Positions 1-56,741 of a stretch of DNA of 64,000 nt are shown piece after piece. Where the stretch lies: assembly GCA_965644295.1 (NCBI GenBank), contig CBFFRP010000395.1, forward strand, positions 214,825 through 278,824, in the 5' to 3' direction. Within the stretch, counting starts at the first letter, position 1; each line of letters opens with the position of its first letter. Origin of the DNA: Paraphysomonas bandaiensis. Its lineage: Eukaryota > Protista > Chrysophyceae. A program made the translations under genes and the position numbers. The notes under the pieces are model-generated. The model ran no database searches, was not told the origin of the DNA, and saw only the letters and a list, made by a program, of their open reading frames with translations.

Positions 1-1818
1 GTTGTGGGATGGCATGCTCCAGAAGATGTTGATATACCTGCTATTGATATACCTAGACGGGATGAAAGTTGTGAAGAATGTGAAGAGTACATTCTAGTCA
101 TGCCGAAAGGGCACACTTCGCTGTGGCAGTCGCTTGGTAGCCAGCGCATTGCGCGCTATGACGTTCAACAATCACTGAGCCTTGTCCACCAAATAGTTGT
201 ATTAGTTCAGCACTTACACGATGCGGGGTTAGTGCACTGTGATCTCAAACCTCGCAATATTCTAATTTCAGACACCCGTCAACTAATTTTATGCGATTTG
301 GATGCAGCTGTTCCTATTGGTGAGCTACGGCCGCAAAATCTGAAGAGCAGTACTGCATATAGTCCGCCTGAGCTAATTCGTCATTATAATAACTCTAATT
401 ATCAGCCAACTGATACAGGTTTGCTTCGCATAGAAGCAAGTTTTGATGTTTGGTCCATTGGAGTTATTTTGTTTGAAGTGTTGACAGGACGACATCTTTT
501 CCCACAGGATATAAGCGACGACAATATGGTGGATGAAGCCTCAGCAATGCAACTCAGTTTGTGGCTATGTATTAACGACGCATTACTTGATATTGTATTG
601 AAAGAATGCGACAGTGTTGAGTTAAGATTGAATGCTCATTACCTGATCCGGTGGTGTCTACAAGGGGACCCTACCCTGCGTCCTAGCATTTCTGATATTC
701 TTACTCATTCGCTCTTTAGTGGTGGAAAATATAGCCCCCCTGATACCTTGCTGTCATATCCTTCGTATAAAGGCAACAAATTATTCAAATCAATAATTTC
801 TCAAAATGGTACTCGCATGAAATATCACGTTTTTATATCACATTTTCAAATGGAGGCATCCGGTGACGTCGGTACATTATATCATATGCTCGAGAATCTC
901 GGTGTGCATGTATGGCGAGATATGAACACGAGGAATTTAACAGAGACAGCCATGCGTCAGGGCGTGTTTGATAGTGATGTATTTGTTCTTTTCCTTACAA
1001 ACTCAGCGCTAAGTCGTTCTTTCTGTCTCAAAGAGGTCGGATGGGCACTTGAATTCGGGAAACCGGTAACAATCATTGTGGAAAGGGAGGAGAGATTTTG
1101 GGCATGGGACTGGACGCGTTGGACACATGACAAATGTTCACGTGTACCGGGAGTATTGAACACCTGGAGAAAAGGTCGACTACAGAATTATTTTGACGAC
1201 GTATATTCACAGCATCATAACGTGTACACTATGATCAAGAAACATCATGAAGAAAAGTCGATGCTTCCCTTTCGACGACGAAAATTTGAAGTGAATGCAT
1301 TGGTACAGGAGTTGTTGCGGAGGGCGGAAGAGCAAGGAGTGACCTGGAAACTACCTCTGACAATTACTGATAGAAAAAATGTGGATTTATTGCGACGCTC
1401 TGAGATATGCATTGTCTCACCTCCAAATGCTACTTCCATTGCTAATGCGATGCGCAACTCTCTTACATTAACATTTCCTTCTATTCAATGGGTGGATGTT
1501 ATTGGAAGTGATACTAATGTTATTGTCATATTAACTTCGCAAACACTCCCTAGCTGCGAGAAGTACATGTCAGACATTGTGGAGAGGAACTCAACCGTAA
1601 CAAACAATGATGATATACATGCCGCCGCAGTGTTATTTATATATTCGGTTGAGCTTGGCTGGGATTTCGCCGACTTCTACGAAAGGCCAGACGACGACAT
1701 TAAAGATTACATTTCCGCCAATGAAGCACTGACACACAGGACACTGCCTTATGAGCATCACGCTCTGTGTTCTGAAATTTTGCGTCGCATATATTTTACT
1801 TCTAATGCGATCAGCTAA
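1..1818 (+). CDS. Ser/Thr protein kinase - TIR domain fusion protein (5'-truncated by window edge)
   Basis: Kinase motifs VHCDLKPRNIL, CDLD in place of DFG, AYSPPE and DVWSIGVILFE. A TIR domain starts at 817: YHVFISH...VHVWRD...GVFDSDVFVLFLTNSALSRSFCLKEVGWALEFGKP. The frame is open from position 1 and the kinase N-lobe is missing. Confidence 0.88.
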   Translation, partial: VVGWHAPEDVDIPAIDIPRRDESCEECEEYILVMPKGHTSLWQSLGSQRIARYDVQQSLSLVHQIVVLVQHLHDAGLVHCDLKPRNILISDTRQLILCDLDAAVPIGELRPQNLKSSTAYSPPELIRHYNNSNYQPTDTGLLRIEASFDVWSIGVILFEVLTGRHLFPQDISDDNMVDEASAMQLSLWLCINDALLDIVLKECDSVELRLNAHYLIRWCLQGDPTLRPSISDILTHSLFSGGKYSPPDTLLSYPSYKGNKLFKSIISQNGTRMKYHVFISHFQMEASGDVGTLYHMLENLGVHVWRDMNTRNLTETAMRQGVFDSDVFVLFLTNSALSRSFCLKEVGWALEFGKPVTIIVEREERFWAWDWTRWTHDKCSRVPGVLNTWRKGRLQNYFDDVYSQHHNVYTMIKKHHEEKSMLPFRRRKFEVNALVQELLRRAEEQGVTWKLPLTITDRKNVDLLRRSEICIVSPPNATSIANAMRNSLTLTFPSIQWVDVIGSDTNVIVILTSQTLPSCEKYMSDIVERNSTVTNNDDIHAAAVLFIYSVELGWDFADFYERPDDDIKDYISANEALTHRTLPYEHHALCSEILRRIYFTSNAIS

Positions 1819-2182
1819 TATATTTACTTATGTTCGATTCATCAACATCTGCTCCGATTTCCCACTTATTGGTGCGCCTTATATATAGTGATTGATTACT
1901 TTCGCCGCGTGATGTAGAATATTGTTAATTTGTTGTGTTTATATAGGCCTGACTTGTATGGTCGCCATGTGTACATGTGTACCATGTTGAGTTCTGCTAT
2001 ATGAGAGCAATTGAAAGCCGGAAGTTGTAAGGTATTAAATTACAGTAGTATACAGTTGTACTTTTATTAATCGTACTGTGAGAATGAATGACGATAAGTA
2101 TAGTAGTAAAACGGTGTAGTGGTGATGCAAGTTGTAGTGACGAAGTAAGATCGTACGAGAAATGAGTGGTAGTAGAGACCAG

Positions 2183-2920
2183 CAGGGCCAGGTAAAAATA
2201 TATTGGATTGCAATATATTGCAATTATTTACTTTTGCTTGCTACAATATATTGATTATTATTTAATCAAAATTTGGCCTCGCAATATATTGATATATATT
2301 GCTCGTTCTTGCGTATCTTAGAAATATATTTGATTAACCACAAATTGCTTTTCATATTCACATATAACTCATCTATTATTATAACATCGAACAATTTTGA
2401 TACATACCTGCAACGAATTTGTTGCAATATTAGAATTCGTACTGTTTCTGTCAAGCTATTCACCAAATAGTAAACTCCAAACTACTTAAATTGATGCTGT
2501 AATCCTCATACAAATCTGTTTTTCTTGTGATCTGTAATAGAATGCCAGTCTAAACAGTCAATAAGCAAGATGCCAGTAAAATGATTGCCATATCCGCCCA
2601 AACTATAACACTAAACTAAACTATCACTGTACAGTATACAGTCCAAACTATTCGGCCATCATCACTTTCATATTTTACACCCAGTATTGACCGACCAAGC
2701 ACATATTCAGTACAACTAACGTTGTGGAGCGTTTGTTCAGCGTATGTCATCCTGACATACTTGCAACAAGGAATGACCCCACGACACTTCGAAATGGTGC
2801 TGTTCCTTCGCTTCAACAAGCACTTGTGGACCGCAGAGACATCATAGATGATGGACTGTCCGACTATAAGAATGAGAACCACAGTGACGACGAGTTGGAA
2901 CACTTAGGCCATTTTTAATA
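2183..2920 (+). mobile_element. Degenerate hAT-family DNA transposon remnant
   Basis: CAGGG terminus at 2183 followed by TTGCAATATATTG subterminal motifs shared with 50938-51627. Peptide remnant TTNVVERLFS near 2713-2745 resembles the hAT C-terminal dimerisation motif. Right end not identified. Confidence 0.55.
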
Positions 2921-3269
2921 CCCTAAATCCCCAGATTTAAGGCTTTCGGGATTCAGGAGTAAAATAGGGTAATAAGTATTTGTTGTTGCTGTTAGTATAC
3001 CCCTAAAACCCAAAATCCCTAAATCCTTTGGCTTATTACAGCAATCGTCACACACATATATATATATATATGCATATAGCTATAATTAATGTTCCATACA
3101 TTATAAAGTATACGACCTCAGCACCATAATATACTCTAGTAGAGGGTTATGAAACGTCGACCTCACTGAGATTGTTATGGAGGCTTTTCTTAAGTTCATA
3201 CAAGAAGATGTGGAATATCAACAGTCATTTAAGCAGCAGAGGATGGAGTTGTAGACATTTGGGAAACGG

Positions 3270-4207
3270 TACATACATACATACATACATACATACATAC
3301 ATACATACATACATACATACATACATACATACATACATACATACATACATACATACATACATACATACCTACATACATACATACATACCTACATACATAC
3401 ATACATACATACATACATACATACATACCTACATACATACATACATACCTACATACATACATACATACATACATACATACATACATACATACATACATAC
3501 ATACCTACATACCTACATACCTACATACCTACATACATACATACATACATACCTACATACCTACATACATACATACATACATACATACATACATACATAC
3601 ATACATACATACATACATACATACATACATACATACATACATACATACATACATACATACATACCTACATACCTACATACATACATACATACATACATAC
3701 ATACATACATACCTACATACCTACATACCTACATACCTACATACCTACATACCTACATACCTACATACATACATACATACATACATACATACATACATAC
3801 ATACATACATACATACATACATACATACATAGATACATACATACATACATACATACATACATAGATACATAGATACATAGATACATAGATACATAGATAC
3901 ATAGATACATAGATACATAGATACATAGATACATAGATACATAGATACATTGATACATAGATACATAGATACATAGATACATAGATACATAGATACATAG
4001 ATACATAGATACATAGATACATAGATACATAGATACATATAGATACATAGATACATACATACATACATACATACATACATACATACATACATACATACAT
4101 ACATACATACATACATACATACATACATACATACATACATACATACATACATACATACATACATACATACATACATACATACATACATACATACATACAT
4201 ACATACA

Positions 4208-4241
<34 letters not shown>

Positions 4242-5091
4242 CATACATACATACATACATACATACATACATACATACATACATACATACATACATACAT
4301 ACATACATACATACATACATACATACATACATACATACATACATACATACATACATACATACATACATACATACATACATACATACATACATACATACAT
4401 ACATACATACATACATACATACATACATACATACATACATACATACATACATACATACATACATACATACATACATACATACATACATACATACATACAT
4501 ACATACATACATACATACATACATACATACATACATACATACATACATACATACATACATACATACATACATACATACATACATACATACATACATACAT
4601 ACATACATACATACATACATACATACATACATACATACATACATACATACATACATACATACATACATACATACATACATACATACATACATACATACAT
4701 ACATACATACATACATACATACATACATACATACATACATACATACATACATACATACATACATACATACATACATACATACATACATACATACATACAT
4801 ACATACATACATACATACATACATACATACATACATACATACATACATACATACATACATACATACATACATACATACATACATACATACATACATACAT
4901 ACATACATACATACATACATACATACATACATACATACATACATACATACATACATACATACATACATACATACATACATACATACATACATACATACAT
5001 ACATACATACATACATACATACATACATACATACATACATACATACATACCTACATACATACATACATACATACATACATACATACATACA

Positions 5092-5120
<29 letters not shown>
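3270..5120. repeat. Giant (TACA)n microsatellite, about 1.85 kb, with TACC variants and a (TAGATACA)n block at about 3862-4052
   Basis: Directly visible in the sequence. Confidence 0.99.
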
Positions 5121-5124
<4 letters not shown>

Positions 5125-5331
5125 TGCCACACAGATACTGATCAGAACAGAGTATACATATAGACCCTCGACTATGTCCATAGCTTATAATGAAGTCCAT
5201 TAAACTCTAGGTATAGATGCAGAGGACATCACATAACAAAGAGAGGTAAGAGTGGTACCTTACATATATACACTATCCAACACAACTAACACACCTACCC
5301 ACTCACACTCTCTCTACATATATATATATAC

Positions 5332-7635
5332 ATGTACAGTACCGTCTCATCAATCCTTAAAGAACTATGGTCATCTGAACTATACAATATCTTATCTTCT
5401 CATTCATTACATCATCAAACTACATCATCATATGATCATCTTATATCTAAAAGGGGTATACCTGTATGGTTATCTGAATGGTTTCAATGCACCCCACATA
5501 TGACATCAACTCATAAACATACTACTAAAAATCCCCTTAAAAAAACACGAACTTCATCAAGAATACATAAAAAACCTACAAATTTGAATCAAATTAATTT
5601 GGAAAATGATATATTATCAACATGGGAAGATCCTCATATCTTAATTCCTGCTCAACAGTATGGTGAAGTTGATGCATGTATATCTGAGATTGCATCAGTT
5701 CCACAACCATTTACTGTATATGTTCATCCACAAGTTAGTTTATTATGTGATATACATAGTCATTTAAGTGATGCTGAAGTAATTGGTCTATTAGCTGGTC
5801 GATGGGATCCAATTGAGCGTTGCATATATATACAAACGGCTTGTCCATGTGATTCAACGGAACGAATAGATGATGATGGTTCGACTGATGTAGAAATGGA
5901 TCCTACTGCTGAATTAGTAGCACGTGAGGCAATACATAGCATGGGACTTATGGTTGTTGGATGGTATCACTCTCACCCTAGTTTCAGGCCCGATCCCTCT
6001 ACCACAGACGTGATTAATCAGCGACAGTATCAGCAGCTAATGCGTGATGAAACCTCAGGTATGGAGCCTTTTGTAGGTCTGATTGTCTCTACTTATGACC
6101 CCTCTCGGCCTGGATTGGAATCTCTGCACCAATGGTTTCATGCAGTGCCCTTCTCCTGCGCGAGTCGAGCTGCAGCATGCCAGTGGCTTCCGATGACGGT
6201 ACGTGTTTGTACGGCCAGTGTCTGTAAAAGTCTGTGTCCTATATCCGGCCAGGTATCACCCGACATCGCATCCACGCTATCAAACCGCCTTTTGTCATTG
6301 AATAATAAATCCTCGGATGGTACATCACTTCAAGGTGAGCCACCACAACCGAATGGTGAAATATCCAAGTCCGTGGAAAAGGAAGATAGTTCCAAAAATG
6401 AACTTCCTAACGAAGAAATGATGTTAAAAGAGGCTGACGTGTCTGTTGGTCTCGATAGAATTAGCGGCAAGTCTAGTCGGGATGAGACCGAGATGAGCCC
6501 GAGCTGTGACCAAACAGAAATAAAGTCCGTGGAAAAGGAAGAAAGTTCCAGAAATGAACTTCCTAACGAGGAAATGAAGTTAAAAGAGGCTGACGTGTCT
6601 GTTGGTCTCGATAGAATTAGCGGCAAGTCTAGTCGGGATGAGACCGAAATGAGTCCGAGCTGTGACCAAACAGAAATAAAGTCCGTGGAAAAGGAAGAAA
6701 GTTCCAGAAATGAACTTCCTAACGAGGAAATGAAGTTAAAAGAGGCTCACGTGTCTGTTGGTCTCGATAGAATTAGCGGCAAGTTCAGTCGGGATGAGAC
6801 CGAGATGAGTCCGAGCTGTGATCAAACAGAAACAAATAGAGCACCAGATAGTGATGATTCTGTCCATCCTTGTAGTAGCCTCGAGAAGGGCAAAAAGGAA
6901 ACAAGTATAGTGAAGATAGAAAATACATCTACTAGAGAGATAGAACAAACTGACTGTACCGATAAAAGCACTGACGCTACTGATGGTGAGAAAGAACAAA
7001 CTGACTGTACCAATGAAAGCGCTGAAGCTACTGATGCTTTGAAAGTCTCATCATCGCCTGAAGGACAGAAAATGCCACTACGTCGATCCCGCATAAGGCG
7101 TGCTCCACGTACTTTCTATGACGATGAAGTGTACGATAATTCCATAAGAGTGGAAAGAACGAATGGACCGACTGATGCCACCTTAACTATATGTCACAAA
7201 GTAAAGGATAATGGGAAGGACAAGAATGTGGCACCTGTTAACGGTGAGGGCGGAAGGAGCAAAAGAGGTGTTAAGCGCCGTCGCAACGGGCTTGGAGTGG
7301 TTTCAACTTCTGGGGGTCGTGGAAGGTGCATGGCCTCCCTGATTCAGTGTCTACAGCAGGAGACATCGGCTGCAGTTAAAGGGCGAACGCTTGTGTGTTC
7401 GGCAGCTCCTATTCTACAATGCTCTTGCATTGGAATTGTCGCCTTGGGCTATCACTATAGCCAATCCAAACGTAAAACCAATATCTTGAAGAAGTGGAAG
7501 AATGTCTTCAAATATAGTAAAATTAAAGCCAGCATTTGTGTTTGGTTGAAGTATATGGGACTAAGTGAAAGTGATCAGGAGTTATTTGCGGATAGCATTG
7601 TTGATTTTTTAAATTCCTGCTGGCGAAATGAATAA
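5332..7635 (+). CDS. MPN+/JAMM metalloprotease (MYSM1/MPND-like deubiquitinase domain) with a long low-complexity C-terminal half
   Basis: HSHLSDAEVIGLLAGRWD...VGWYHSHPSFRPDPSTTD gives an intact E...HxHx7Sx2D JAMM motif, followed by PFVGLIVS. 767-aa ORF. Confidence 0.88.
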   Translation: MYSTVSSILKELWSSELYNILSSHSLHHQTTSSYDHLISKRGIPVWLSEWFQCTPHMTSTHKHTTKNPLKKTRTSSRIHKKPTNLNQINLENDILSTWEDPHILIPAQQYGEVDACISEIASVPQPFTVYVHPQVSLLCDIHSHLSDAEVIGLLAGRWDPIERCIYIQTACPCDSTERIDDDGSTDVEMDPTAELVAREAIHSMGLMVVGWYHSHPSFRPDPSTTDVINQRQYQQLMRDETSGMEPFVGLIVSTYDPSRPGLESLHQWFHAVPFSCASRAAACQWLPMTVRVCTASVCKSLCPISGQVSPDIASTLSNRLLSLNNKSSDGTSLQGEPPQPNGEISKSVEKEDSSKNELPNEEMMLKEADVSVGLDRISGKSSRDETEMSPSCDQTEIKSVEKEESSRNELPNEEMKLKEADVSVGLDRISGKSSRDETEMSPSCDQTEIKSVEKEESSRNELPNEEMKLKEAHVSVGLDRISGKFSRDETEMSPSCDQTETNRAPDSDDSVHPCSSLEKGKKETSIVKIENTSTREIEQTDCTDKSTDATDGEKEQTDCTNESAEATDALKVSSSPEGQKMPLRRSRIRRAPRTFYDDEVYDNSIRVERTNGPTDATLTICHKVKDNGKDKNVAPVNGEGGRSKRGVKRRRNGLGVVSTSGGRGRCMASLIQCLQQETSAAVKGRTLVCSAAPILQCSCIGIVALGYHYSQSKRKTNILKKWKNVFKYSKIKASICVWLKYMGLSESDQELFADSIVDFLNSCWRNE
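6367..6832 (+). repeat. Three near-identical in-frame 156-bp (52-aa) tandem repeats
   Basis: AAGTCCGTGGAAAAGGAA recurs at 6367, 6523 and 6679. The peptide KSVEKE...SPSCDQTE occurs three times. Confidence 0.97.
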
Positions 7636-8591
7636 GTAGTAATTTGCATGTTTTTAGTTGTACTATCATATGTGATGTGAATAGTGGAAGTGGCATAACT
7701 AACTTTTGGTATACAAAGTTATTGCTTGTCAGTATTTATGATTGATGATTGAGTAAGTTCCATACTACAAGTTGTGGAAGTTTCACTTTACATACAACGA
7801 ATCAACAGGTTGCAGATGTTTTGAAAAGGACCTGTGCGTTTCAACACTAATGGGTACATAATTACTAAAAAGTAATCAAAATATTTCAGCTTGAAGTGTT
7901 GAAATGTTTCTACGCTCTACGTACATAAATGTCATGATGAATATGGGAAGAATTGTGGACACACGAGGCTTTTGTAGTCTTTCTTAGCATTATCATATCA
8001 TTTATGGACTATTCGAGCGCAGCTGACTTGAATGCTTTTGTATATATATTATGACTCACACAATCTAGCTAACCACGACCATAGAGAACTAGGTGCCTTT
8101 TCCTCGAATCACCATTAGCATCAGATGTGGCATTTGAACTCTCCAGTAATATTCTTGAAGTTGAAGATAGATCGTATGCTCGAATATCATTATGATCTAC
8201 TAAACATCAGACGAAGAATGGAAGATAACTTGGAGTGTTAAATGATCTGATTTTGAAAGTGGAGTCGTTATTGTGGTTTCACTGTCATTGTGTAATATAT
8301 TGAAATCACATGCAAGTGTCTGTCGATATTATAATTAAAATAGAAGAGATTTTATGCTCACACCGAATATTGAAGTTGAATGTCTATATATACCTGGTGC
8401 TAATATGAGCGTTCTGTTGAACCCAAGAAATTGCTTTCTTTTAGACAAAAAGAAAATAACACATATATTATCAAAACACTGAGCTAATTAGTGATAAGAT
8501 CACCTTGTAGCTAACATGAACCGGAACTGCATTATTTAGTAATCATAAAATTGCAGTTTAGACTTCTTTTTTTAAATTCAAAAGTAACCTA

Positions 8592-26421: not shown

Positions 26422-26791
26422 ACCCCGCGGTTGATGTATGATGTCACTCTGAATGCCGGAGGCAATCGATCTGTGCGAATCAGTTTTATGTCTATAATGT
26501 ACTTTTATATATATTTCGTTTTTGATTGGATTATAGTTACTAGACTGCTACTATATACAGTATTCCGCGACATTTTTGTGTATTGCATGTAGCAATTATT
26601 ATTTTACATTCATTGGATTCGTATTCATCCAATGAGTAGTGTTTATTCTAACGAGTAGTCCATATCTGTAAATTTAGTACTAACATTGGGTCAGATTTGA
26701 AGACATTCTTCATTCCTACCCTACCTTTTAAGAATACAGTTAATGTTGTGCATTGTGGATCAGGTTTAAAACAGGAGAGTAGCTATATGTT

Positions 26792-27372
26792 TGTAGCAAA
26801 ATTGGGTATGTCAAGTATGGGTGATTTAGGAGGTTGTTATGGCTGAAGAATAAGATGAAGTGATGTAGGTTGTAGTATGAAATGAGATGTAGATGGTAGT
26901 TATGATTAGATCAGAAGATACGAGTATTAAGGCCAGATATAAGGTTGGAGTGTACCGGAACTACCCGTACATACGGATGTAACGGACGGTCATGGTAACC
27001 CGTACAGTATTATGATGGTATACGTAGGTATTCTGTAGGATGATATAGGAGTAGATAGCAGGATGTTAAGGGATTTCTATATGATTATTTCTGGAAGTAG
27101 AAAACTAGCTATTTATGGCTGGGAAACCACTTCTAGAATTAACTATGGGGATATAGGTAGAAGGATATGGAGTTTTAGATATAATAGTGAAAGTTGATAT
27201 TGTAGTTGTTGAAAGTTAAGAAGTAGCGAAGTAAAGAGTAAGAAGAGGAAGTTAATTGAAGAGTGTTGTGAGAAGACTATCCTACCCCACATCACCTGTG
27301 CACATGGACAGGGATGATAAGACCAGCAATGTTAGTCATGATAGCGAGGCTCAATCACCCGTAGTCGTTACA
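26792..27372 (+). repeat. 5' LTR (581 bp)
   Basis: TGTAGCAAAATTGGG...GTAGTCGTTACA. Only two substitutions against the 3' LTR were found by eye. Confidence 0.97.
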
Positions 27373-30300
27373 CTTGGTGGACAACGTGGGCTGGGTACAG
27401 TGGTTGAGAGTGATCAACTCAGCCATGCGTCACCCAGCGCACTATCGGCACGATCTCGGAGAGAGCCTTTGCCAGAAGAGGGAAACATTGAGAGTATCAG
27501 CCTAGACCATGAGGGAGAGGAGAGACAGGAGACTAAGGAGGAACTGCGGTCCCATGCACAGAAGGACCTATTGGAGCACGGGCTGAGGATGCAGAGTATG
27601 GATGATAAGAAAGGTGGAACCCAACCCAATTGGTCTGGAAGGTCTACAGAGCAGATAGAATGGATGCGTGATCCTATTCTTGGAGGCAGAGACCTGGAGA
27701 TGGGGGATAGGAGTAGTAGAGATGATATGAAGAGCTCGTGGAGGAGCACAGGAAGAGAAGAGAAGATTAAAAGAAGAGATGTTTACGCAAGAGCAGATGA
27801 TGTAAGGGGCCCATTAGGAGGTCCTGGAGATAATTATATGAAAGATGAAGATTTAAGGGGCCCGTTAGGAGGTCCTGGATATGCCAGAAGAGATGATTAT
27901 ATGAAAGATGAAGATTTGAAGGGCCCATCAGGAGGTCCTAGATATAGTAGAAGAGAGGATTATGCAACTGAAGAAGATATGAGGGGCCCATCAGGAGGTC
28001 CTAGATATAGTAGAAGAGATGAGTATGCAAGTGCAGAAGATGTGAGGGGCCCATCAGGAGGTCCTGGATATAGTAAAAGAGAGGATTATGTGAGAGAAGT
28101 GAATTTTAGGGACCTATCCAGAGGTCTTGGTGAAGAGATAGAAAAGCAGATGAGAGTACCTGAATGGCTGGTGGAGCCTAGTAGAGAACGGAGTGTAAAA
28201 GGACAGATTGGGAGATTAAGTAGAAGTGTACAGAGTGAAAGAGAGTTGCACCGACTGTTGATGAGAGAATTAGAGATAGGAGTAGGGAATGAAGGGTTGA
28301 CTGCAGCGCACCGTCAGGCGTGTGAATATTGGCTCCGGAATCGAAGTAGACTATTGAGTGGTAGTATGAAGACGGGTATAAAGATGCTCAGCCAGCTGAC
28401 TGAACTAAACCGAATAGGGGAGAGGATACAGTATGTGGAGGCTCAGCAAGAGGCGCTGTTAGCTGCTAGGAAGGAGTTATCAGAGAAGGCAAGGATGTTG
28501 TGGATACAAAAAGGAGAGAGCATGTGTGATAGTAATAGAAGGATCTTAGACAGGATGCGTGTAATGGAGGAAGTTGATGAAACAGATAGTGATGACTGGG
28601 AGAACGACGCAGGAGTATATATTAAGGGAGTTATGAGAGGGCCTTTATCAGGAATACAGACTATGACACGGGAAGAAGCAGAGACATGTGGATATAAGAC
28701 ATTCTGCCGCTGGTGCAATATGGTGGGAAAGGAGTACAAGAGTAGTCTGGATAGGCAGTTAGAGGAAAAGTGTCAGAGTTTTCTGAGGACTCGGAATGTT
28801 GCGCAGCATGTGTTTGACTTGTTAGGGAAGATACCCATACCTCGATGGATGAGGATGGAGACCGCAGGAAAGCTGAGATTCCAACCTATAGACTTTGATG
28901 CTTTAGGACGCTCAACAGGAATGGTGAAGAGAGTGGATTGTGTCCAGTTCTTTGATAGTCTTTATGCAGCAGCGCATACTGCGAATATGTCACCCATGAG
29001 AATATTAGCGGAGATAAGAGGAGGAACAGTATTCAAAGGAGAGTTAGCTGAAGAGGTGAGATGGAGAATGGCATCAGGTGACTTCGAGATGGACATAGAT
29101 AGGAACAGACGAGCAGAGGAGACCCCTGAGACGGATGTTGTGGCATGGGGATATGCACTGTATCAGTTCTCCATATTGTTTACAGAAGCCTTCGGGGTAA
29201 AGATGGATCCTGCAGTATTAATGATGGAGATCGATAGGTTCGAGTTATCCGACGAATCACCACAGGCGTTTGAGAAGTCTCTGATGGAGTTAAGATATTT
29301 AATTACGCAAGCGGGAGTAACTGAGCCAGAGAGAGAGTTATATCACAAGTTCAAGGTGAAGACTATAGATATGCCACGAGTAGGTAAAAGAGTAGCAGAT
29401 GAAGTGGAGAGCATTATCCAAATAAAGCAGTGTATGGGAGTGAGGAACGTGCAATATGATCGGAACTTTTTAGTGTCTACTGTTGCACAGATTGTACCTC
29501 GGATAGTGGATCAAGACAGTCTTAACAGTAAGAATGAGAAGGTGATAAGGTCGCATGGAGTGTATGCGGGAAGAGCAGTTCCAGAAAAGTGTGAACGTAG
29601 GATAGATGGACTAGAAAGAAGTACTCGACCATGGAAGTTCCTTAAGTGTGAGACATGTGGGTTTAAACACTATATGAACCGTTTTTGTCCATTTAGAGAT
29701 GATAGGAAGAAAGATGATGGGACATATATGAAATGTGCGGAGTTTAACGGATATAAGCCATGGAGATTTGCTAAGTTTGAGGCGAAGACTTTAGAGAAGA
29801 TATTTGAGGTCATGAAGCAAAATAGCAAGGCGTGGCAAGAACTTGGAGATGTGTTGAAAAGAAAATTCGTACAAATGGTAGCCGATGCAAAAGAAGAGCA
29901 GGTGAAGAGTATGAGGAATGTCTTACATCATGTGCGGACCGTAGGAGAGCCGACCAAGGAAAGGGTAGAGGAAACCAGAGGATTAGAGACGGTGAAGTCA
30001 GAAGATGGAAACCAGCAAGTGTCTAATAGAAAAGTCAGTGTGGCACATACGATGACGTCACCGGCACAACATGATGATAAGAAGATAAGGATGGATACTT
30101 TAACTTGGTGGTGTGGAGAAGCGATTGTAAGAGGAGAGACAATACCGATGGCAATTCATGTGGATGGTGGATCAGAAGGAGCATTCATGCATGAAGGGCT
30201 AGCAGAGGAAATGGGTTTAGAAGTTCATGAGTATCCAAGGGATCAACAATACCTGGTGATGGGAGCTACAGGACAAGGAAGATGTCCGGAACGAGTGACA

Positions 30301-30681
30301 AAGTATGTATATCTATGTATGCGGATAGACGGAGTGGAGTATTATGGTGAAATGTTGGGAGAATTGAAGACTGGACATCCGATACAGAGCATATGGAAGT
30401 GTAAGTTTGATCTGATACCTAATATGACGGCTTCATGCTTATGGGGAGGAGCGGAAGTGAAGGAGTTGAAAGAGCATCGTGCCTTTGTGGTGAGAACACC
30501 AGAGGGTATACCTGTTGTCATGAAAGGAAAGTCATACGCAGAAACAATGAAATGGATGGCTAAGACGAGACATCGGGTAGCAGAACATCCAGTGTATCAA
30601 GGTAATATCACGGAAGGACGGAGGGTCAATACTGTGTGGAAGATAAGCCAATACCCTAACCAGTACTGTGTAAGACAATGA
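27304..30681 (+). CDS. Gag-protease polyprotein of the LTR element (first ATG lies inside the 5' LTR)
   Basis: Uninterrupted ORF of about 1125 aa. Atypical knuckle CETCGFKHYMNRFC at 29647-29688. Retropepsin-like IHVDGGSEGAFMHEGLAEEMGL with the Asp at 30163. N-terminal 21-aa RGPxGGP repeats. Confidence 0.85.
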   Translation: MDRDDKTSNVSHDSEAQSPVVVTLGGQRGLGTVVESDQLSHASPSALSARSRREPLPEEGNIESISLDHEGEERQETKEELRSHAQKDLLEHGLRMQSMDDKKGGTQPNWSGRSTEQIEWMRDPILGGRDLEMGDRSSRDDMKSSWRSTGREEKIKRRDVYARADDVRGPLGGPGDNYMKDEDLRGPLGGPGYARRDDYMKDEDLKGPSGGPRYSRREDYATEEDMRGPSGGPRYSRRDEYASAEDVRGPSGGPGYSKREDYVREVNFRDLSRGLGEEIEKQMRVPEWLVEPSRERSVKGQIGRLSRSVQSERELHRLLMRELEIGVGNEGLTAAHRQACEYWLRNRSRLLSGSMKTGIKMLSQLTELNRIGERIQYVEAQQEALLAARKELSEKARMLWIQKGESMCDSNRRILDRMRVMEEVDETDSDDWENDAGVYIKGVMRGPLSGIQTMTREEAETCGYKTFCRWCNMVGKEYKSSLDRQLEEKCQSFLRTRNVAQHVFDLLGKIPIPRWMRMETAGKLRFQPIDFDALGRSTGMVKRVDCVQFFDSLYAAAHTANMSPMRILAEIRGGTVFKGELAEEVRWRMASGDFEMDIDRNRRAEETPETDVVAWGYALYQFSILFTEAFGVKMDPAVLMMEIDRFELSDESPQAFEKSLMELRYLITQAGVTEPERELYHKFKVKTIDMPRVGKRVADEVESIIQIKQCMGVRNVQYDRNFLVSTVAQIVPRIVDQDSLNSKNEKVIRSHGVYAGRAVPEKCERRIDGLERSTRPWKFLKCETCGFKHYMNRFCPFRDDRKKDDGTYMKCAEFNGYKPWRFAKFEAKTLEKIFEVMKQNSKAWQELGDVLKRKFVQMVADAKEEQVKSMRNVLHHVRTVGEPTKERVEETRGLETVKSEDGNQQVSNRKVSVAHTMTSPAQHDDKKIRMDTLTWWCGEAIVRGETIPMAIHVDGGSEGAFMHEGLAEEMGLEVHEYPRDQQYLVMGATGQGRCPERVTKYVYLCMRIDGVEYYGEMLGELKTGHPIQSIWKCKFDLIPNMTASCLWGGAEVKELKEHRAFVVRTPEGIPVVMKGKSYAETMKWMAKTRHRVAEHPVYQGNITEGRRVNTVWKISQYPNQYCVRQ
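27375..27390 (+). promoter_or_regulatory. Primer-binding site TGGTGGACAACGTGGG, probably for tRNA-Ala
   Basis: Starts 2 nt after the LTR end with TGG. Its complement ...GUUGUCC-A-CCA fits an Ala acceptor stem (U70 of G3:U70, discriminator A73). Confidence 0.8.
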
Positions 30682-30762
30682 TACAGGATGAATCTGTAAG
30701 AGTTCAAGTGGTCAATATGAAGCCAGATCGTTATGTTGTTGGACCTATTCAGGTCTTGGATT

Positions 30763-30771
30763 AGGGGGAAG
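30763..30771 (+). promoter_or_regulatory. Polypurine tract AGGGGGAAG
   Basis: Immediately upstream of the TG that starts the 3' LTR. Confidence 0.85.
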
Positions 30772-31352
30772 TGTAGCAAAATTGGGTATGTCAAGTATGG
30801 GTGATTTAGGAGGTTGTTATGGCTGAAGAATAAGATGAAGTGATGTAGGTTGTAGTATGAAATGAGATGTAGATGGTAGTTATGATTAGATCAGAAGATA
30901 CGAGTATTAAGGCCAGATATAGGGTTGGAGTGTACCGGAACTACCCGTACATACGGATGTAACGGACGGTCATGGTAACCCGTACAGTATTATGATGGTA
31001 TACGTAGGTATTCTGTAGGATGATATAGGAGTAGATAGCAGGATGTTAAGGGATTTCTATATGATTATTTCTGGAAGTAGAAAACTAGCTATTTATGGCT
31101 GGGAAACCACTTCTAGAATTAACTATGGGGATATAGGTAGAAGGATATGGAGTTTTAGATATAATAGTGAAAGTTGATATTGTAGTTGTTGAAAGTTAAG
31201 AAGTAGCGAAGTAAAGAGTAAGAAGAGGAAGTTAAGTGAAGAGTGTTGTGAGAAGACTATCCTACCCCACATCACCTGTGCACATGGACAGGGATGATAA
31301 GACCAGCAATGTTAGTCATGATAGCGAGGCTCAATCACCCGTAGTCGTTACA
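30772..31352 (+). repeat. 3' LTR (581 bp)
   Basis: Direct repeat of 26792-27372. Confidence 0.97.
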
Positions 31353-32391
31353 TGTTGTTGAAGAAATACAGAACCAGGGAAACGTTAATTGAGTGCATAA
31401 ATTATATACTGTTAATCTGAGCAATTCATAGAGTTCTCCAATCACTTTCCTTCTATGTTCTAGATAGTTGCTTACCTATCTTCCGTTGGATGCATCTTTT
31501 ACACATGCATATATAGTTTTCTGTTCTCTGATACATAGTTGTTGGACGATATAATGTCCAATCACATGACTGTATCGTATAATGATTGGTGAAATTGTCA
31601 TAAACACACTGTATTGTGGTATTAGGCTGTGTTTTATATGTAAACGATATTTTTGTGTATTGCATGTAGCAATTATTATTTTACATTCATTGGATTCGTA
31701 TTCATCCAATGAGTAGTGTTTATTCTAACGAGTAGTCCATATCTGTAAATTTAATACTAACATTGGGTCCGATTTGAAGACATTCTTCATTCCTACCCTA
31801 CCTTTTAAGAATACAGTTAATGTTGTGCATTGTGGATCAGGTTTAAAACAGGAGAGTAGCTATATGTTGCTGAAGAAATACAGAACCAGGGAAACGTTAA
31901 TTGAGTGCATAAATTATATACTGTTAATCTGAGCAATTCATAGAGTTCTCCAATCACTTTCCTTCTATGTTCTAGATAGTTGCTTACCTATCTTCCGTTG
32001 GATGCATCTTTTACACATGCATATATAGTTTTCTGTTCTCTGATACATAGTTGTTGGACGATATAATGTCCAATCATATGACTGTATCGTATAATGATTG
32101 GTGAAATTGTCATAGACACACTGTATTGTGGCTGTATAAGTAAACTCTGGATGGTGGTACACACATACACAGCAGTCAGTAGACAATAGCCATTCTGTAT
32201 ACCGGTATACGGTATACCACTATTGGCTGACGTACTGATATACTGCTGTATATACGTACACTGTACAGTGATAGAGCGCCTGCTGTGTATGTGTTAAAGT
32301 ACTCTACTCTACTCTATCCTCTGCTGACTATCATACATCACCATGAGATGTTCCTGTGTAGGTTGATAGTCTCTTACACTCTTCGTCTCTC

Positions 32392-44497: not shown

Positions 44498-45022
44498 AAT
44501 AAAGTTAGAATATCCTTCAATACAGATGTCACGCGCTATTTTTGCAACAATACGATAATCATGCTGTATATGTTGGAAAGGTTGGAGCTTGGATGATTTA
44601 TCCTGCTCCCTATTCCAGGTATTAATAATTGAGATGAAGAACTATACATGAAATATTTACTCCAATGACCGCAGGCGATAGTAGTCACTATCAGATCAAG
44701 CTACATCACTCTATCATAATGCAATTGACACGTATCCTGTAAATGTATCCAAAAGTTAATGTACTGAACTATCTCGTATCACCACAAGCGACCAGTACCA
44801 CTATGCGGTTATATCCTCATGTTATACACACACAGACTGAGAGTGTAATTCAGATAACCCATCCATGACCTTTCGATGAAATATCACTGGGTTGATGGTA
44901 CCAAAGAGACTTGTCCAACCTGTTCCTGCCCCATTTTCAACATTTACCGAAGCAAATAACAAAAGTAATGACTGTGATGCATGTTCATTGCAACTAGACC
45001 ATCCAAAGAATACCGAGTGTAT

Positions 45023-45028
45023 AGGTAC

Positions 45029-45059
<31 letters not shown>

Positions 45060-45152
45060 TGTATGTATGTATGTATGTATGTATGTATGTATGTATGTAT
45101 GTATGTATGTATGTATGTATGTATGTATGTATGTATGTATGTATGTATGTAC

Positions 45153-45183
<31 letters not shown>

Positions 45184-45310
45184 TGTATGTATGTATGTAT
45201 GTATGTATGTATGTATGTATGTATGTATGTATGTATGTATGTATGTATGTATGTATGTATGTATGTATGTATGTATGTATGTATGTATGTATGTGTATGT
45301 ATGTAGGTAC

Positions 45311-45341
<31 letters not shown>

Positions 45342-45476
45342 TGTATGTATGTATGTATGTATGTATGTATGTATGTATGTATGTATGTATGTATGTATGT
45401 ATGTATGTATGTATGTATGTATGTATGTATGTATATATGTATGTATGTATGTATGTATGTGTATGTATGTAGGTAC

Positions 45477-45507
<31 letters not shown>

Positions 45508-45651
45508 TGTATGTATGTATGTATGTATGTATGTATGTATGTATGTATGTATGTATGTATGTATGTATGTATGTATGTATGTATGTATGTATGTATGTAT
45601 GTATGTATGTATGTATGTATGTATGTATGTATGTATGTATGTATGTGTATG
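45023..45651. repeat. (TATG)n microsatellite, about 630 bp, with the marker AGGTACATAT at 45023, 45305 and 45471
   Basis: Directly visible in the sequence. Confidence 0.98.
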
Positions 45652-45773
45652 TTAGTTCTTATGAGTGGGTAAGTGGTCATATAGAAGGTGACCTGCTGCA
45701 TCGATACTCTTCTATATAGCATTATAATGGTTTAACTCTACTTATACAAATCACTTACTATCAAACAATTTCA

Positions 45774-55677: not shown

Positions 55678-55778
55678 GAGTTGAATGATAAGAGGAGTAT
55701 GAGGGGGGTTGATTAGAGGAGATGGAGTGAAGCTATGGAGATGTGGATATATTCTGAAACAAGTTCCATATCAAACAC

Positions 55779-56503
55779 GTATGTATGTATGTATGTATGT
55801 ATGTATGTATGTATGTATGTATGTATGTATGTATGTATGTATGTATGTATGTATGTATGTATGTATGTATGTATGTATGTATGTATGTATGTATGTATGT
55901 ATGTATGTATGTATGTATGTATGTATGTATGTATGTATGTATGTATGCATGTATGTATGTATGTATGTATGTATGTATGTATGTATGTATGTATGTATGT
56001 ATGTATGTATGTATGTATGTATGTATGTATGTATGTATGTATGTATGTATGCATGTATGTATGTATGTATGTATGTATGTATGTATGTATGTATGTATGT
56101 ATGTATGTATGTATGTATGTATGTATGTATGTATGTATGTATGTATGTATGTATGTATGTATGTATGTATGTATGTATGTATGTATGTATGCATGTATGT
56201 ATGTATGTATGTATGTATGTATGTATGTATGTATGTATGTATGTATGTATGTATGTATGTATGTATGTATGTATGTATGTATGCATGTATGTATGTATGT
56301 ATGTATGTATGTATGTATGTATGTATGTATGTATGTATGTATGTAGGTAGGTATGTATGTATGTATGTATGTATGTATGTATGTATGTATGTATGTATGT
56401 ATGTATGTATGTATGCATGTATGTATGTATGTATGTATGTATGTATGTATGTATGTATGTATGTATGTATGTATGTATGTATGTATGTATGTATGTATGT
56501 ATG
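55779..56503. repeat. (TATG)n microsatellite, about 720 bp, between two divergent genes
   Basis: Directly visible, with occasional CATG and TAGG variants. Confidence 0.99.
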
Positions 56504-56741
56504 TTGGTACAATGATAATAGTGTTGCAGTACAATCCGAGCCCAACTATTCTATTGGGATTGTGTGATGTGTCCATCTTCCAACATCCCTATCATACACC
56601 TCACCTATTCACACTTCACATAACTACATAACACCTGTTGAGAGATTGTATTGGGGTATCACAACACACTCCCTGACAGGTCAGAGGGGCCTACTAACAT
56701 CGTCTTATAGTGGCTTAGTGCCCATAGAGGCTTATACAGAG

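What the first reader, a model, noticed from the sequence alone, without database searches (positions are those of the whole stretch)
26792..31352. Very young LTR retroelement that encodes only Gag + protease
Seen: all cis signals are intact (581-bp LTRs differing at about 2 positions, TGTA..TACA ends, PBS, PPT, 4-bp TSD). One unbroken ORF of about 1125 aa fills almost the entire interior and stops about 80 bp before the PPT. It has a knuckle and a retropepsin motif but no RT, RNase H or integrase. Known: a TSD plus matched LTRs result from reverse transcription and integrase action, and Gag(-PR)-only elements (TR-GAG type) are described mainly from plants. Inference: the element may have moved in this form using Pol in trans while supplying its own capsid. 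That would make it a satellite, or half of a bipartite Gag-only/Pol-donor system, in a protist.
Basis: partly seen in the sequence, partly recalled or inferred. Interest (0 to 1): 0.8.

Follow-up and report, generated by a model that had tools for sequence, protein, structure and literature searches.

The report
Pol-less Gag-carrying LTR retrotransposon, stramenopile
This is a real, recently inserted LTR retrotransposon of a marine stramenopile that lost its reverse transcriptase and integrase genes by one internal deletion but kept a selected Gag-plus-protease-like gene, so it probably copies itself with enzymes borrowed from a relative, a lifestyle already known from plants and predicted in a brown alga.

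Summary
There are two 581-bp LTRs with 2 differences, TGTA..TACA ends, a TGTT target duplication, a PBS-like site and a PPT. One intact 1125-aa ORF lies between them, and no RT, RNase H or integrase core.

New findings:
- A paralogous empty target site lies 500 bp downstream.
- The ORF starts inside the 5' LTR.
- An out-of-frame remnant of the integrase C-terminus sits before the PPT. The element is therefore a deletion derivative of a Ty3/gypsy-type element. Its nearest pol-bearing relatives, from marine metagenomes, encode Gag, a PR-like domain, RT, RNase H, SET and IN in one ORF.
- Five contigs from four other datasets carry the same pol-less structure, three of them across the deletion junction. 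One dataset is a probable culture transcriptome of the same species.
- Copies differ by 0.1-1.8% internally and up to 4-5.6% in LTRs, far more than this copy's own LTR pair (0.34%).
- Substitutions among copies give dN/dS of about 0.33 (p = 4e-6).

So the pol-less form probably transposed as such and its ORF matters. No donor of Pol was found.

The "protease" motif is non-canonical (D-G-G-S) and the "knuckle" is CX2CX3HX5C. No Pfam, PDB or fold support was obtained. Gag-only and Gag/PR-only LTR elements are known in plants and were predicted in Ectocarpus, so this is a new member of a known kind.

The parts
26788..26791 (+). 5' copy of the 4-bp target-site duplication TGTT
   Evidence: Sequence read directly. 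It matches 31353-31356 and the single TGTT of the paralogous empty site.
26792..27372 (+). 5' LTR, 581 bp, with TGTA...TACA ends. It contains the ORF start codon at 27304.
   Evidence: 99.66% identical to the 3' LTR. About 75% identical to the LTR of the pol-bearing relative L001.
27375..27390 (+). PBS-like site TGGTGGACAACGTGGG. It lies within a 28-nt block (27370-27397) that is identical in the relative L001.
   Evidence: The 20-mer at 27374-27393 is present in 7 of the 8 element loci of both families, all except the unrelated-family locus L010. The cognate tRNA was not identified.
27304..30681 (+). Single intact ORF of 1125 aa: Gag-like region plus PR-like domain
   Evidence: It is 59% identical to aa 1-1195 of P0002 and P0017. 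dN/dS among pol-less copies is about 0.33.
27772..28135 (+). About six tandem 63-bp (21-aa) repeats inside the N-terminal, low-complexity part of the ORF. The copy number varies among copies.
   Evidence: families D1 and D4. L002 has 133 extra bp here.
28621..29646 (+). Conserved, predicted all-helical region (aa 440-781), taken as capsid-like from its position only
   Evidence: 67% identical to P0002. Helical in a low-confidence AF2 model. No Pfam or PDB match.
29647..29688 (+). CCHC-like motif CETCGFKHYMNRFC (CX2CX3HX5C), a non-canonical zinc-knuckle candidate
   Evidence: The cysteines and histidine are invariant in P0002. Not recognised by Pfam zf-CCHC.
30100..30600 (+). Retropepsin-like domain with D-G-G-S (30163-30174) in place of D-S/T-G-A, a G-rich flap-like motif (30259-30279) and an LWGG motif (30436-30459)
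   Evidence: It aligns with a distant family that has canonical V-T-D-S-G-S. Relatives give weak sub-threshold Pfam hits to Asp_protease_2 (E 0.085) and Peptidase_A2B (E 0.16). The AF2 model was unusable.
30612..30660 (+). Interval containing the deletion junction that removed region X, RT, RNase H, SET and most of integrase
   Evidence: Homology to the PR-side of L001 ends, and homology to its integrase tail begins, within this interval. L002, L006 and L005 are colinear with the window across it.
30615..30761 (+). Out-of-frame remnant of the integrase C-terminus (…PVLCKTMIQDESVRVQVVNMKPDRYVVGPIQVLD*), interrupted by a stop
   Evidence: tblastn against the L001 integrase, aa 358-404: 53% identity, E 1.4e-7. 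Translation.
30758..30771 (+). Polypurine tract GGATTAGGGGGAAG abutting the 3' LTR
   Evidence: Nearly identical in L001.
30772..31352 (+). 3' LTR, 581 bp
31353..31356 (+). 3' copy of the TSD TGTT
31645..32131 (+). Second unit of a host 512-bp tandem duplication. It carries the paralogous empty target site (TGTT at 31865-31868).
   Evidence: Families D3 and D5. Junction shown.

Best explanation
[quoted passage not shown] It derives from a Ty3/gypsy-type lineage whose intact members encode Gag, a PR-like domain, a 275-aa spacer, RT, RNase H, SET and integrase as one polyprotein.

One internal deletion joined the end of the PR-like domain to the last ~50 codons of integrase. That removed every enzyme needed for reverse transcription and integration. 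All cis signals remained (LTRs, PBS, PPT), as did the Gag/PR-like ORF, which is translated from an ATG inside the 5' LTR.

The deleted form is transcribed. It has probably been reverse-transcribed and integrated at least once as such, using RT and IN supplied in trans by a related autonomous element not present in this window. The 4-bp TSD and the near-identical LTRs of this copy come from that event.

Purifying selection on its ORF suggests that its own Gag, and perhaps the PR-like domain, contributes to its propagation, for example by preferentially packaging the RNA that encoded it.

Shown: the structure, the deletion origin, shared structure across datasets, divergence among copies exceeding this copy's LTR divergence, and dN/dS below 1.

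Inferred: trans-mobilisation, use of its own Gag, and protease activity.
For: - Anatomy, TSD and empty site.
- Deletion origin: window 30615-30761 is homologous to the C-terminus of the L001 integrase (rve, Integrase_H2C2, SH3_Tf2-1). P0002 and P0017 continue past the window's stop into RT, RNase H, SET and IN.
- Same layout elsewhere: L002 and L006 (JGI 3300017004) and L005 (ERZ27288150) are colinear with the window across the junction. L008 (ERZ27287772) and L009 (ERZ17098584) hold the rest of the same pol-less layout, including 3' end, PPT and LTR. P0007 and P0011 end at the same stop.
- Timing: the window copy differs from the other copies by 1.35-1.81% internally and 0.7-4.3% in the LTR (1.7-4.3% against L008, L009 and the 3' part of L005). 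Its own LTRs differ by 0.34%, with one-sided Fisher p from 0.022 to 0.0001.
- Two variants in one culture sample: L002 and L006 differ by 10 substitutions, a 32-bp indel and a stop.
- Selection: 34 synonymous against 43 non-synonymous changes plus 1 stop, over 613 synonymous and 2360 non-synonymous sites. Omega is about 0.33, binomial p = 4e-6, with 10/10 in both the CA-like and PR-like parts. For the window against L002 alone omega is 0.29.
- Expression: the same JGI sample contains an mRNA-like contig of the host JAB gene that is 98.5-99.1% identical to window 5195-7694.
- Cis-signal conservation: a 28-nt PBS block and the PPT/LTR start are conserved with a family whose Gag is only 59% identical.
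Against: - No RT/IN donor was found in the 64-kb window or in the databases for this family. The nearest pol-bearing family is only about 71-75% identical in DNA, and its host is unknown.
- No second copy with its own flanks and TSD could be retrieved, so independent insertions are inferred from divergence statistics only.
- L008 and L009 have a gap in coverage (window 30172-30202) but do cover the junction (30203-31352); L002, L006 and L005 cross it in a single colinear match.
- LTR-LTR gene conversion could mimic a young insertion.
- Metagenome contigs may be chimeras of several copies. The two LTR parts of L005 differ by 5.6%.
- That JGI sample 3300017004 is a transcriptome is my inference from contig shapes.
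- Gag and PR identities rest on position and motifs. Pfam, PDB and AF2 gave nothing usable.
- D-G-G lacks the Ser/Thr of the retropepsin 'fireman's grip' (established knowledge), so catalytic competence is doubtful, even in the autonomous relatives.
Confidence: 0.75

Rival explanations
1. It is a dead relic. A full-length element inserted here and lost pol afterwards by a local deletion. The matching contigs in other datasets are the same orthologous locus in other strains.
For: Host divergence between the window and the JGI culture is about 0.9-1.5%. That is similar to the element's divergence from L002 and L006 (1.35-1.7%). No copy with different flanks was recovered.
Against: If the insertion pre-dated the strain split, this copy's LTRs should differ by at least as much as the orthologues do. 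About 8-10 differences are expected and 2 are observed (p = 0.002-0.02). LTR variants attached to the pol-less interior differ by up to 4-5.6%, far above host divergence. Two variants occur in one clonal culture. dN/dS of 0.33 is not expected for a relic.
Confidence: 0.1
2. It is a domesticated gag-like host gene (in the manner of Arc or PEG10) that still sits between old LTRs. Purifying selection would then reflect a host function, not transposition.
For: The ORF is intact, dN/dS is below 1 and the element is probably expressed.
Against: The LTRs are near-identical, and the TSD, PBS and PPT are intact. The insertion is absent from a 98-99% identical paralogous site. Several copies carry different disabling lesions: a 32-bp deletion plus a stop in L002, and a 211-bp deletion in L008 and L009. 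That pattern is typical of a transposon family.
Confidence: 0.05
3. It is an assembly artefact: a collapsed or chimeric join that deleted pol in silico.
For: Repeats are error-prone to assemble. Several related contigs are circularly permuted or end inside LTRs.
Against: Three contigs from two other datasets (L002, L006, L005), built by independent assemblies, cross the same junction at base level. Contig names show at least two different assemblers among the datasets. The ORF reads through to a stop, and the integrase remnant is in another frame, as a real deletion would leave it.
Confidence: 0.02

Closest known systems
[quoted passage not shown] 2015, PMC4350172)
   Same: LTRs, PBS, PPT and TSD are intact. 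A single ORF encodes the structural protein. There is no RT, RH or IN. The element is transcribed, looks young and is presumed to be mobilised in trans. In both cases the autonomous partner is often not identifiable. Four TR-GAG families were already predicted in the stramenopile Ectocarpus (PMC4350172, section 22).
   Different: This element is 4.56 kb, whereas TR-GAG was defined as under 4 kb. Its TSD is 4 bp rather than 5 bp. Its ORF also retains a PR-like domain. Its Gag matches none of the Gag HMMs (Retrotrans_gag, UBN2) used to define TR-GAG. The host is a unicellular or planktonic marine stramenopile.
GAG/PROT-only non-autonomous LTR families of sugar beet (PMC13570524)
   Same: The coding content is the same: Gag plus protease only. 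They derive from Ty3-gypsy or Ty1-copia ancestors, exceed the TR-GAG size limit, and many lack a recent autonomous partner.
   Different: Those are plant elements with recognisable GAG and PROT domains. Here both domains are orphan or non-canonical.
AT5TE33540 (ATCOPIA63 TR-GAG) of Arabidopsis (PMC8704663)
   Same: It is a Gag-only LTR element, and new insertions were observed directly. This shows that such elements can transpose with enzymes supplied in trans.
   Different: It belongs to the Copia lineage and its autonomous partner (AT3TE48480) is identified. Its transposition is demonstrated experimentally, not inferred.
BARE-2/BARE-1 of barley, ETn/MusD of mouse, and LARD/TRIM elements (from memory, and as cited in PMC4350172)
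   Same: They are non-autonomous LTR elements that keep cis signals and use a partner's proteins.
   Different: BARE-2 is the mirror image: it lacks Gag and keeps pol. ETn, LARD and TRIM encode nothing.
Ty3/gypsy (Metaviridae-type) retrotransposons
   Same: Relatives have the order PR-like, RT, RNase H, IN, with an H2C2 zinc-binding domain, an rve core and a Tf2-type SH3 tail. The window keeps the SH3-tail remnant.
   Different: The window element has no RT, so it cannot be placed by RT phylogeny. The lineage also has unusual features: a D-G-G-S protease motif, a SET domain between RNase H and IN, and gag starting inside the LTR.

Membership tests
LTR retrotransposon (structural definition) | Two direct long terminal repeats with short inverted termini (TG..CA) | tested here: met
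   The LTRs are 581 bp and 99.66% identical, with TGTA...TACA ends.
LTR retrotransposon (structural definition) | Target-site duplication of 4-6 bp flanking the element | tested here: met
   TGTT is present on both sides and occurs once in the paralogous empty site.
LTR retrotransposon (structural definition) | PBS complementary to a host tRNA 3' end next to the 5' LTR, and a PPT next to the 3' LTR | tested here: inconclusive
   The PPT is present. A TGG-initiated 16-nt site lies 2 nt after the LTR, within a 28-nt block that is invariant across families. There is no tRNA in the window, so complementarity could not be checked.
Ty3/gypsy lineage | Pol domain order PR-RT-RH-IN and RT phylogeny | tested here: inconclusive
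   The window has no RT. The relatives P0017 and L001 show RT, then RNase H, then (SET), then IN with H2C2, rve and SH3_Tf2-1. The window keeps the homologous IN tail. No RT tree was built.
TR-GAG / Gag(-PR)-only non-autonomous LTR elements | Single ORF for the structural protein, with RT, RNase H and integrase absent | tested here: met
   Only an out-of-frame remnant of about 49 codons of IN is left.
TR-GAG / Gag(-PR)-only non-autonomous LTR elements | The ORF is recognisably Gag (Retrotrans_gag/UBN2-type domain) | tested here: not met
   No Gag family is matched in Pfam even at E <= 10, and there is no PDB match. The Gag assignment rests on position upstream of PR in the relatives' polyprotein, helical prediction and a CCHC-like motif.
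TR-GAG / Gag(-PR)-only non-autonomous LTR elements | Length under 4 kb (original definition, PMC4350172) | tested here: not met
   The element is 4561 bp. PMC13570524 argues that this size limit is not biologically meaningful.
TR-GAG / Gag(-PR)-only non-autonomous LTR elements | Several copies with different TSDs (amplification as such) | tested here: inconclusive
   At least four sequence variants share the pol-less structure, and the divergence statistics favour separate insertions. No other copy's flanks could be fetched.
TR-GAG / Gag(-PR)-only non-autonomous LTR elements | Transcription | tested here: inconclusive
   L002 and L006 come from JGI sample 3300017004, which also holds an mRNA-like contig of a host gene. 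That the sample is RNA is inferred.
Retropepsin (peptidase A2) | Catalytic D-T/S-G-A motif | tested here: not met
   The motif is H-V-D-G-G-S in the window and in P0001, P0002 and P0009. The distant family has D-S-G-S.
Retropepsin (peptidase A2) | Retropepsin fold or profile match | tested here: inconclusive
   Only sub-threshold hits were found in relatives: Asp_protease_2 at E 0.085 and Peptidase_A2B at E 0.16. The AF2 model had pLDDT 34, and the PDB profile search found nothing.
CCHC zinc knuckle (PF00098) | C-X2-C-X4-H-X4-C spacing | tested here: not met
   The spacing is C-X2-C-X3-H-X5-C. There is no zf-CCHC hit. The motif is conserved in P0002.

The most novel reading that the evidence does not exclude
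The Gag/PR-like-only element is not a decaying by-product. It could be a stable, selected 'capsid-carrying satellite' strategy in a clade of marine stramenopile Ty3/gypsy elements. Under this reading it makes its own particles, with a non-canonical D-G-G protease-like domain, and takes RT and IN from a diverged helper. The strategy would have arisen at least twice, because a second family with only about 25% identity also fuses its PR-like domain to the integrase tail (L010, P0018).
Probability: 0.2. Interest if true: 0.6.

Novelty: new member of a known kind. Interest (0 to 1): 0.4.

Why it matters
The element extends Gag(-PR)-only non-autonomous LTR retrotransposons to a planktonic stramenopile. 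Until now these were documented in angiosperms and only predicted in Ectocarpus.

It also adds evidence that is rare for this class. The structural ORF has stayed under purifying selection after pol was lost. That bears on the open question raised in PMC4350172 and PMC8704663: do such elements need their own Gag, or do they merely tolerate it?

The family is an orphan in sequence space. Only two relatives turned up among 1.84 billion representative proteins. Current domain-based TE annotation would therefore miss it or label it an unknown gene.

For genome annotation, the 1125-aa ORF should be masked as transposon-derived rather than called a host gene.

Tried and rejected
- Structure prediction: the conserved 686-aa region gave pLDDT 31.7 and the PR-like core gave pLDDT 34.1. 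Both are unusable, so I ran no fold search.
- PDB profile searches with A1 and A2 found nothing at E <= 10.
- Pfam on the ORF and its pieces returned only noise.
- The word-index protein search with the ORF found only P0001 and P0002. I repeated it with the longer P0002 as query so that polyproteins up to 2812 aa could be candidates, and that returned only P0002 itself.
- The exhaustive representative search added only P0003.
- The metagenome protein-pattern scan found no relative.
- The metagenome PBS 20-mer scan gave one chance hit in a 60% GC contig, L003.
- The viral-contig scan and the phage collection found nothing.
- Exact-sequence look-ups of the window ORF, a host ORF and P0012 were not on record.
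- ARAGORN and Rfam found nothing in the window, so the PBS tRNA is unidentified.
- The bacterial promoter/terminator scan is irrelevant to a eukaryote.
- I considered inferring the U3/R/U5 borders from transcript contig ends. I dropped this because the ends are more likely assembler breakpoints.
- None of the contigs looked human.

Full report

Yes. A repeat search finds two 581-bp direct repeats at 26792-27372 and 30772-31352. They differ at only two positions, 151 and 465. The ends read TGTA...TACA.

The four bases TGTT flank both sides (26788-26791 and 31353-31356). A purine tract, GGATTAGGGGGAAG (30758-30771), abuts the 3' LTR. Two bases after the 5' LTR lies TGGTGGACAACGTGGG (27375-27390), which has the form of a tRNA primer-binding site.

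The host DNA around the element is a tandem duplication of a roughly 512-bp unit: 26568-26791 plus 31353-31644, then 31645-32131. The second unit is 98-99% identical to the first and uninterrupted. It reads ...CTATATGTT|GCTGAAG with a single TGTT. This is a built-in empty site. It confirms both the insertion and the 4-bp duplication.

One ORF runs from ATG 27304 to the stop at 30679-30681 (1125 aa), 76 bp before the PPT. The ATG lies inside the 5' LTR, so the PBS lies inside the ORF. The N-terminal third contains about six 63-bp (21-aa) tandem repeats at 27772-28135.

**2. What does the ORF encode?**

Pfam gives nothing for the whole protein or for its parts. Profile searches of the PDB give nothing. 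Two AlphaFold runs on shallow alignments were unusable, with pLDDT 32 and 34, so I made no fold comparison.

Its spacing is CX2CX3HX5C rather than the canonical CX2CX4HX4C, but it is conserved in the nearest relative.

The "retropepsin motif" is H-V-D-G-G-S, and there is no D-S/T-G anywhere in the ORF. The domain around it (aa ~933-1099) is nevertheless probably retropepsin-derived, for four reasons:
- It sits between the knuckle and RT in the relatives' polyprotein.
- It has the usual succession of a catalytic-loop motif, a glycine-rich flap-like motif (MGATGQG) and an LWGG motif where retropepsins have hhLG.D.
- The only distant homologue found in an exhaustive search of 1.84 billion representative proteins (P0003, E 3.6e-5) aligns over this domain and carries canonical V-T-D-S-G-S.
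- Relatives give weak hits to Asp_protease_2 (E 0.085) and the Ty3 peptidase family (E 0.16) at exactly this place.

Whether D-G-G is catalytically competent is unknown. The pol-bearing relatives carry the same D-G-G-S, so it is a lineage trait and not decay in this copy.

The "Gag" assignment rests on position, on a helical prediction and on the knuckle. It does not rest on homology to any known Gag.

**3. Where did the element come from?**

The word-index search found two relatives. P0002 is 1607 aa, comes from a Tara Oceans contig (L001) and is 59% identical over the whole ORF. It does not stop where the window ORF stops. It continues for about 400 aa into the start of RT (...FPLPRIDDLLDQ).

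Members of its 90% cluster include P0017 (2496 aa, locus L007). Pfam finds RVT_1, RNase H, a SET domain and the integrase zinc-binding domain in that single ORF. L001 begins with the end of an integrase (H2C2, rve, Tf2-type SH3), followed by a PPT, an LTR and gag. The lineage is therefore of Ty3/gypsy type.

In the window, the 150 bp before the PPT (30615-30761) translate, in a frame different from the ORF and with an internal stop, into a sequence homologous to the last ~49 residues of that integrase (53% identity, E 1.4e-7). Homology to the PR side ends, and homology to the integrase tail begins, within 30612-30660.

The element is therefore a derivative in which one internal deletion removed a 275-aa spacer, RT, RNase H, SET and nearly all of integrase. 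No RT or integrase core is encoded anywhere in the 64-kb window.

**4. Did it move in this form?**

Cluster look-ups and contig retrieval gave five further contigs of the window's own family:
- L002 and L006, from JGI sample 3300017004
- L005, from ERZ27288150
- L008, from ERZ27287772
- L009, from ERZ17098584

All five have the pol-less layout. L002, L006 and L005 run colinear with the window across the junction, and the L002 alignment shows it base by base. L008 and L009 leave a small gap at 30172-30202 but span the junction (30203-31352) along with the rest of the layout, including 3' end, PPT and LTR. The short proteins P0007 and P0011 end at the same stop. No member of this family with pol was found.

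Outside the 63-bp repeats, the copies differ by 0.1-1.8%. The window copy is 1.35-1.81% from every other. LTR pieces attached to pol-less interiors differ from the window's LTRs by 0.7-4.3%, and the two LTR parts of L005 differ by 5.6%.

By contrast, the window's own LTRs differ by 0.34%. LTRs are identical at integration. If all these contigs were one orthologous locus, or if the deletion had happened in place after insertion, this copy's LTRs should differ by at least as much as the copies do. That predicts about 8-10 differences, and 2 are observed. One-sided p runs from 0.02 to 0.0001, depending on the comparison.

One clonal culture sample also holds two variants. L002 and L006 differ by 10 substitutions, a 32-bp indel and a stop. 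The simplest reading is that the pol-less form was copied and integrated at least once.

Three caveats apply:
- Metagenome contigs can be chimeras.
- LTR gene conversion would mimic a young insertion.

**5. Is the ORF still used?**

Among the pol-less copies I counted 34 synonymous changes, 43 non-synonymous changes and 1 stop. The ORF has 613 synonymous and 2360 non-synonymous sites. This gives omega of about 0.33 (binomial p = 4e-6). The ratio is even (10/10) in both the capsid-like and PR-like parts. It is relaxed (7 non-synonymous to 1 synonymous) in the short tail next to the junction. For the window against L002 alone, omega is 0.29.

All these copies share the deletion, so this selection acted after pol was lost. 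The ORF is intact in the window (1125 aa) and in L005 (1104 aa). Other copies carry different lesions, as in any transposon family.

**6. Host and expression**

A neighbouring host gene, the JAB/MPN protein at 5332-7635, has its best named relatives in Ochromonadaceae sp. CCMP2298 and in oomycetes. The host is therefore a stramenopile. I could not determine the species.

The same JGI sample that yielded L002 and L006 contains a contig of this host gene (L011). It is 98.5-99.1% identical in DNA and consists of the ORF with short untranslated ends. That sample therefore comes from the same species or a near strain and looks like a transcriptome, which would mean the element is transcribed. I infer the RNA origin from contig shape; I did not read it from metadata.

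**7. Mechanism**

Shown:
- the intact cis signals
- the origin by deletion
- a family of pol-less copies
- a young insertion
- selection on the ORF

Inferred:
- Transcripts start in the 5' LTR and are translated from the LTR-internal ATG into a Gag/PR-like protein.
- RT and integrase come in trans from an autonomous relative.
- The element's own Gag contributes to its success, for instance by cis-preferential packaging.

The cis signals are strongly conserved across families. A 28-nt block around the PBS is identical, and the PPT and LTR start (TGTAGCAA) are nearly so, in a family whose Gag is only 59% identical. A fairly diverged helper could therefore recognise them. The helper itself remains unidentified. 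The cluster-2 family is the only candidate type seen, and its host is unknown.

**8. Comparison with known systems, and novelty**

Gag-only LTR elements (TR-GAG) were defined in plants. The same paper predicted them in the brown alga Ectocarpus, which is a stramenopile (PMC4350172). Transposition of one was observed directly in Arabidopsis ddm1 (PMC8704663). Twenty-eight GAG/PROT-only families are catalogued in sugar beet (PMC13570524).

The present element works like these. It fails two formal TR-GAG criteria: it is longer than 4 kb, and its Gag is not recognisable by HMM. It differs in host, in retaining a PR-like domain with D-G-G-S, and in being an orphan in sequence space.

I rate it a new member of a known kind and moderately interesting. 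The interest lies mainly in the post-deletion purifying selection. A second, distant family (P0022/L010 and P0018) likewise joins a PR-like domain to the integrase tail, which hints that the architecture recurs.

**9. Conduct**

The element belongs to a protist. 

Noticed in passing
L007 (protein P0017, aa 2095-2198); not in the window: The autonomous relatives carry a SET domain between RNase H and integrase, inside the single pol ORF (PF00856, E 7e-11, with a weak PRDM2_PR hit). This is a histone-lysine-methyltransferase-like module in a Ty3/gypsy polyprotein. One full-text search found no description of it.
   Followed up: partly
L010 599-2128 (P0022), and P0018 from JGI 3300045399: A distant family is about 25% identical in the PR-like domain and has canonical D-S-G-S. 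Its PR-like domain is fused in frame, through RVPVGK repeats, to the integrase C-terminal SH3 tail. A PPT-like GAGGGGG and a TGTAAC LTR start follow. This looks like an independent pol-less derivative.
   Followed up: partly
window 26568-26791 + 31353-31644 and 31645-32156: There is a host tandem duplication of a roughly 512-bp AT-rich intergenic unit, with units 98-99% identical. The retrotransposon sits in the first unit only.
   Followed up: yes
window 27772-28135: The Gag N-terminal region contains 63-bp (21-aa, RRDDY..ED.RGPSGGPRYS-like) tandem repeats. Their number differs among copies, and L002 has 133 bp more here. The relative P0002 has a Cys-rich zinc-ribbon-like segment in this part instead.
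   Followed up: partly
window 6367-6836 compared with L011: The host JAB/MPN gene contains an internal tandem repeat of about 159 bp. Its copy number differs between the window and the culture transcript.
   Followed up: no
window 4-1818: An ORF that runs off the window start combines a protein kinase domain with a TIR_2 domain. This is an unusual pairing for a protist signalling or immune-like protein.
   Followed up: no
window 3745-5181 (-), 44822-45722 and 55709-56576 (both strands): Several long ORFs overlap in different frames and on both strands, which indicates low-complexity or repetitive DNA. The region 2001-6000 also shows a strong GC-skew excursion.
   Followed up: no
L008 and L009: Two independently assembled contigs are circular permutations of the element: 3' interior, one LTR, then 5' interior. 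Both carry a 211-bp internal deletion (window 29322-29532). This fits RNA-derived assembly through R, one-LTR circles or tandem copies, and I did not resolve which.
   Followed up: partly
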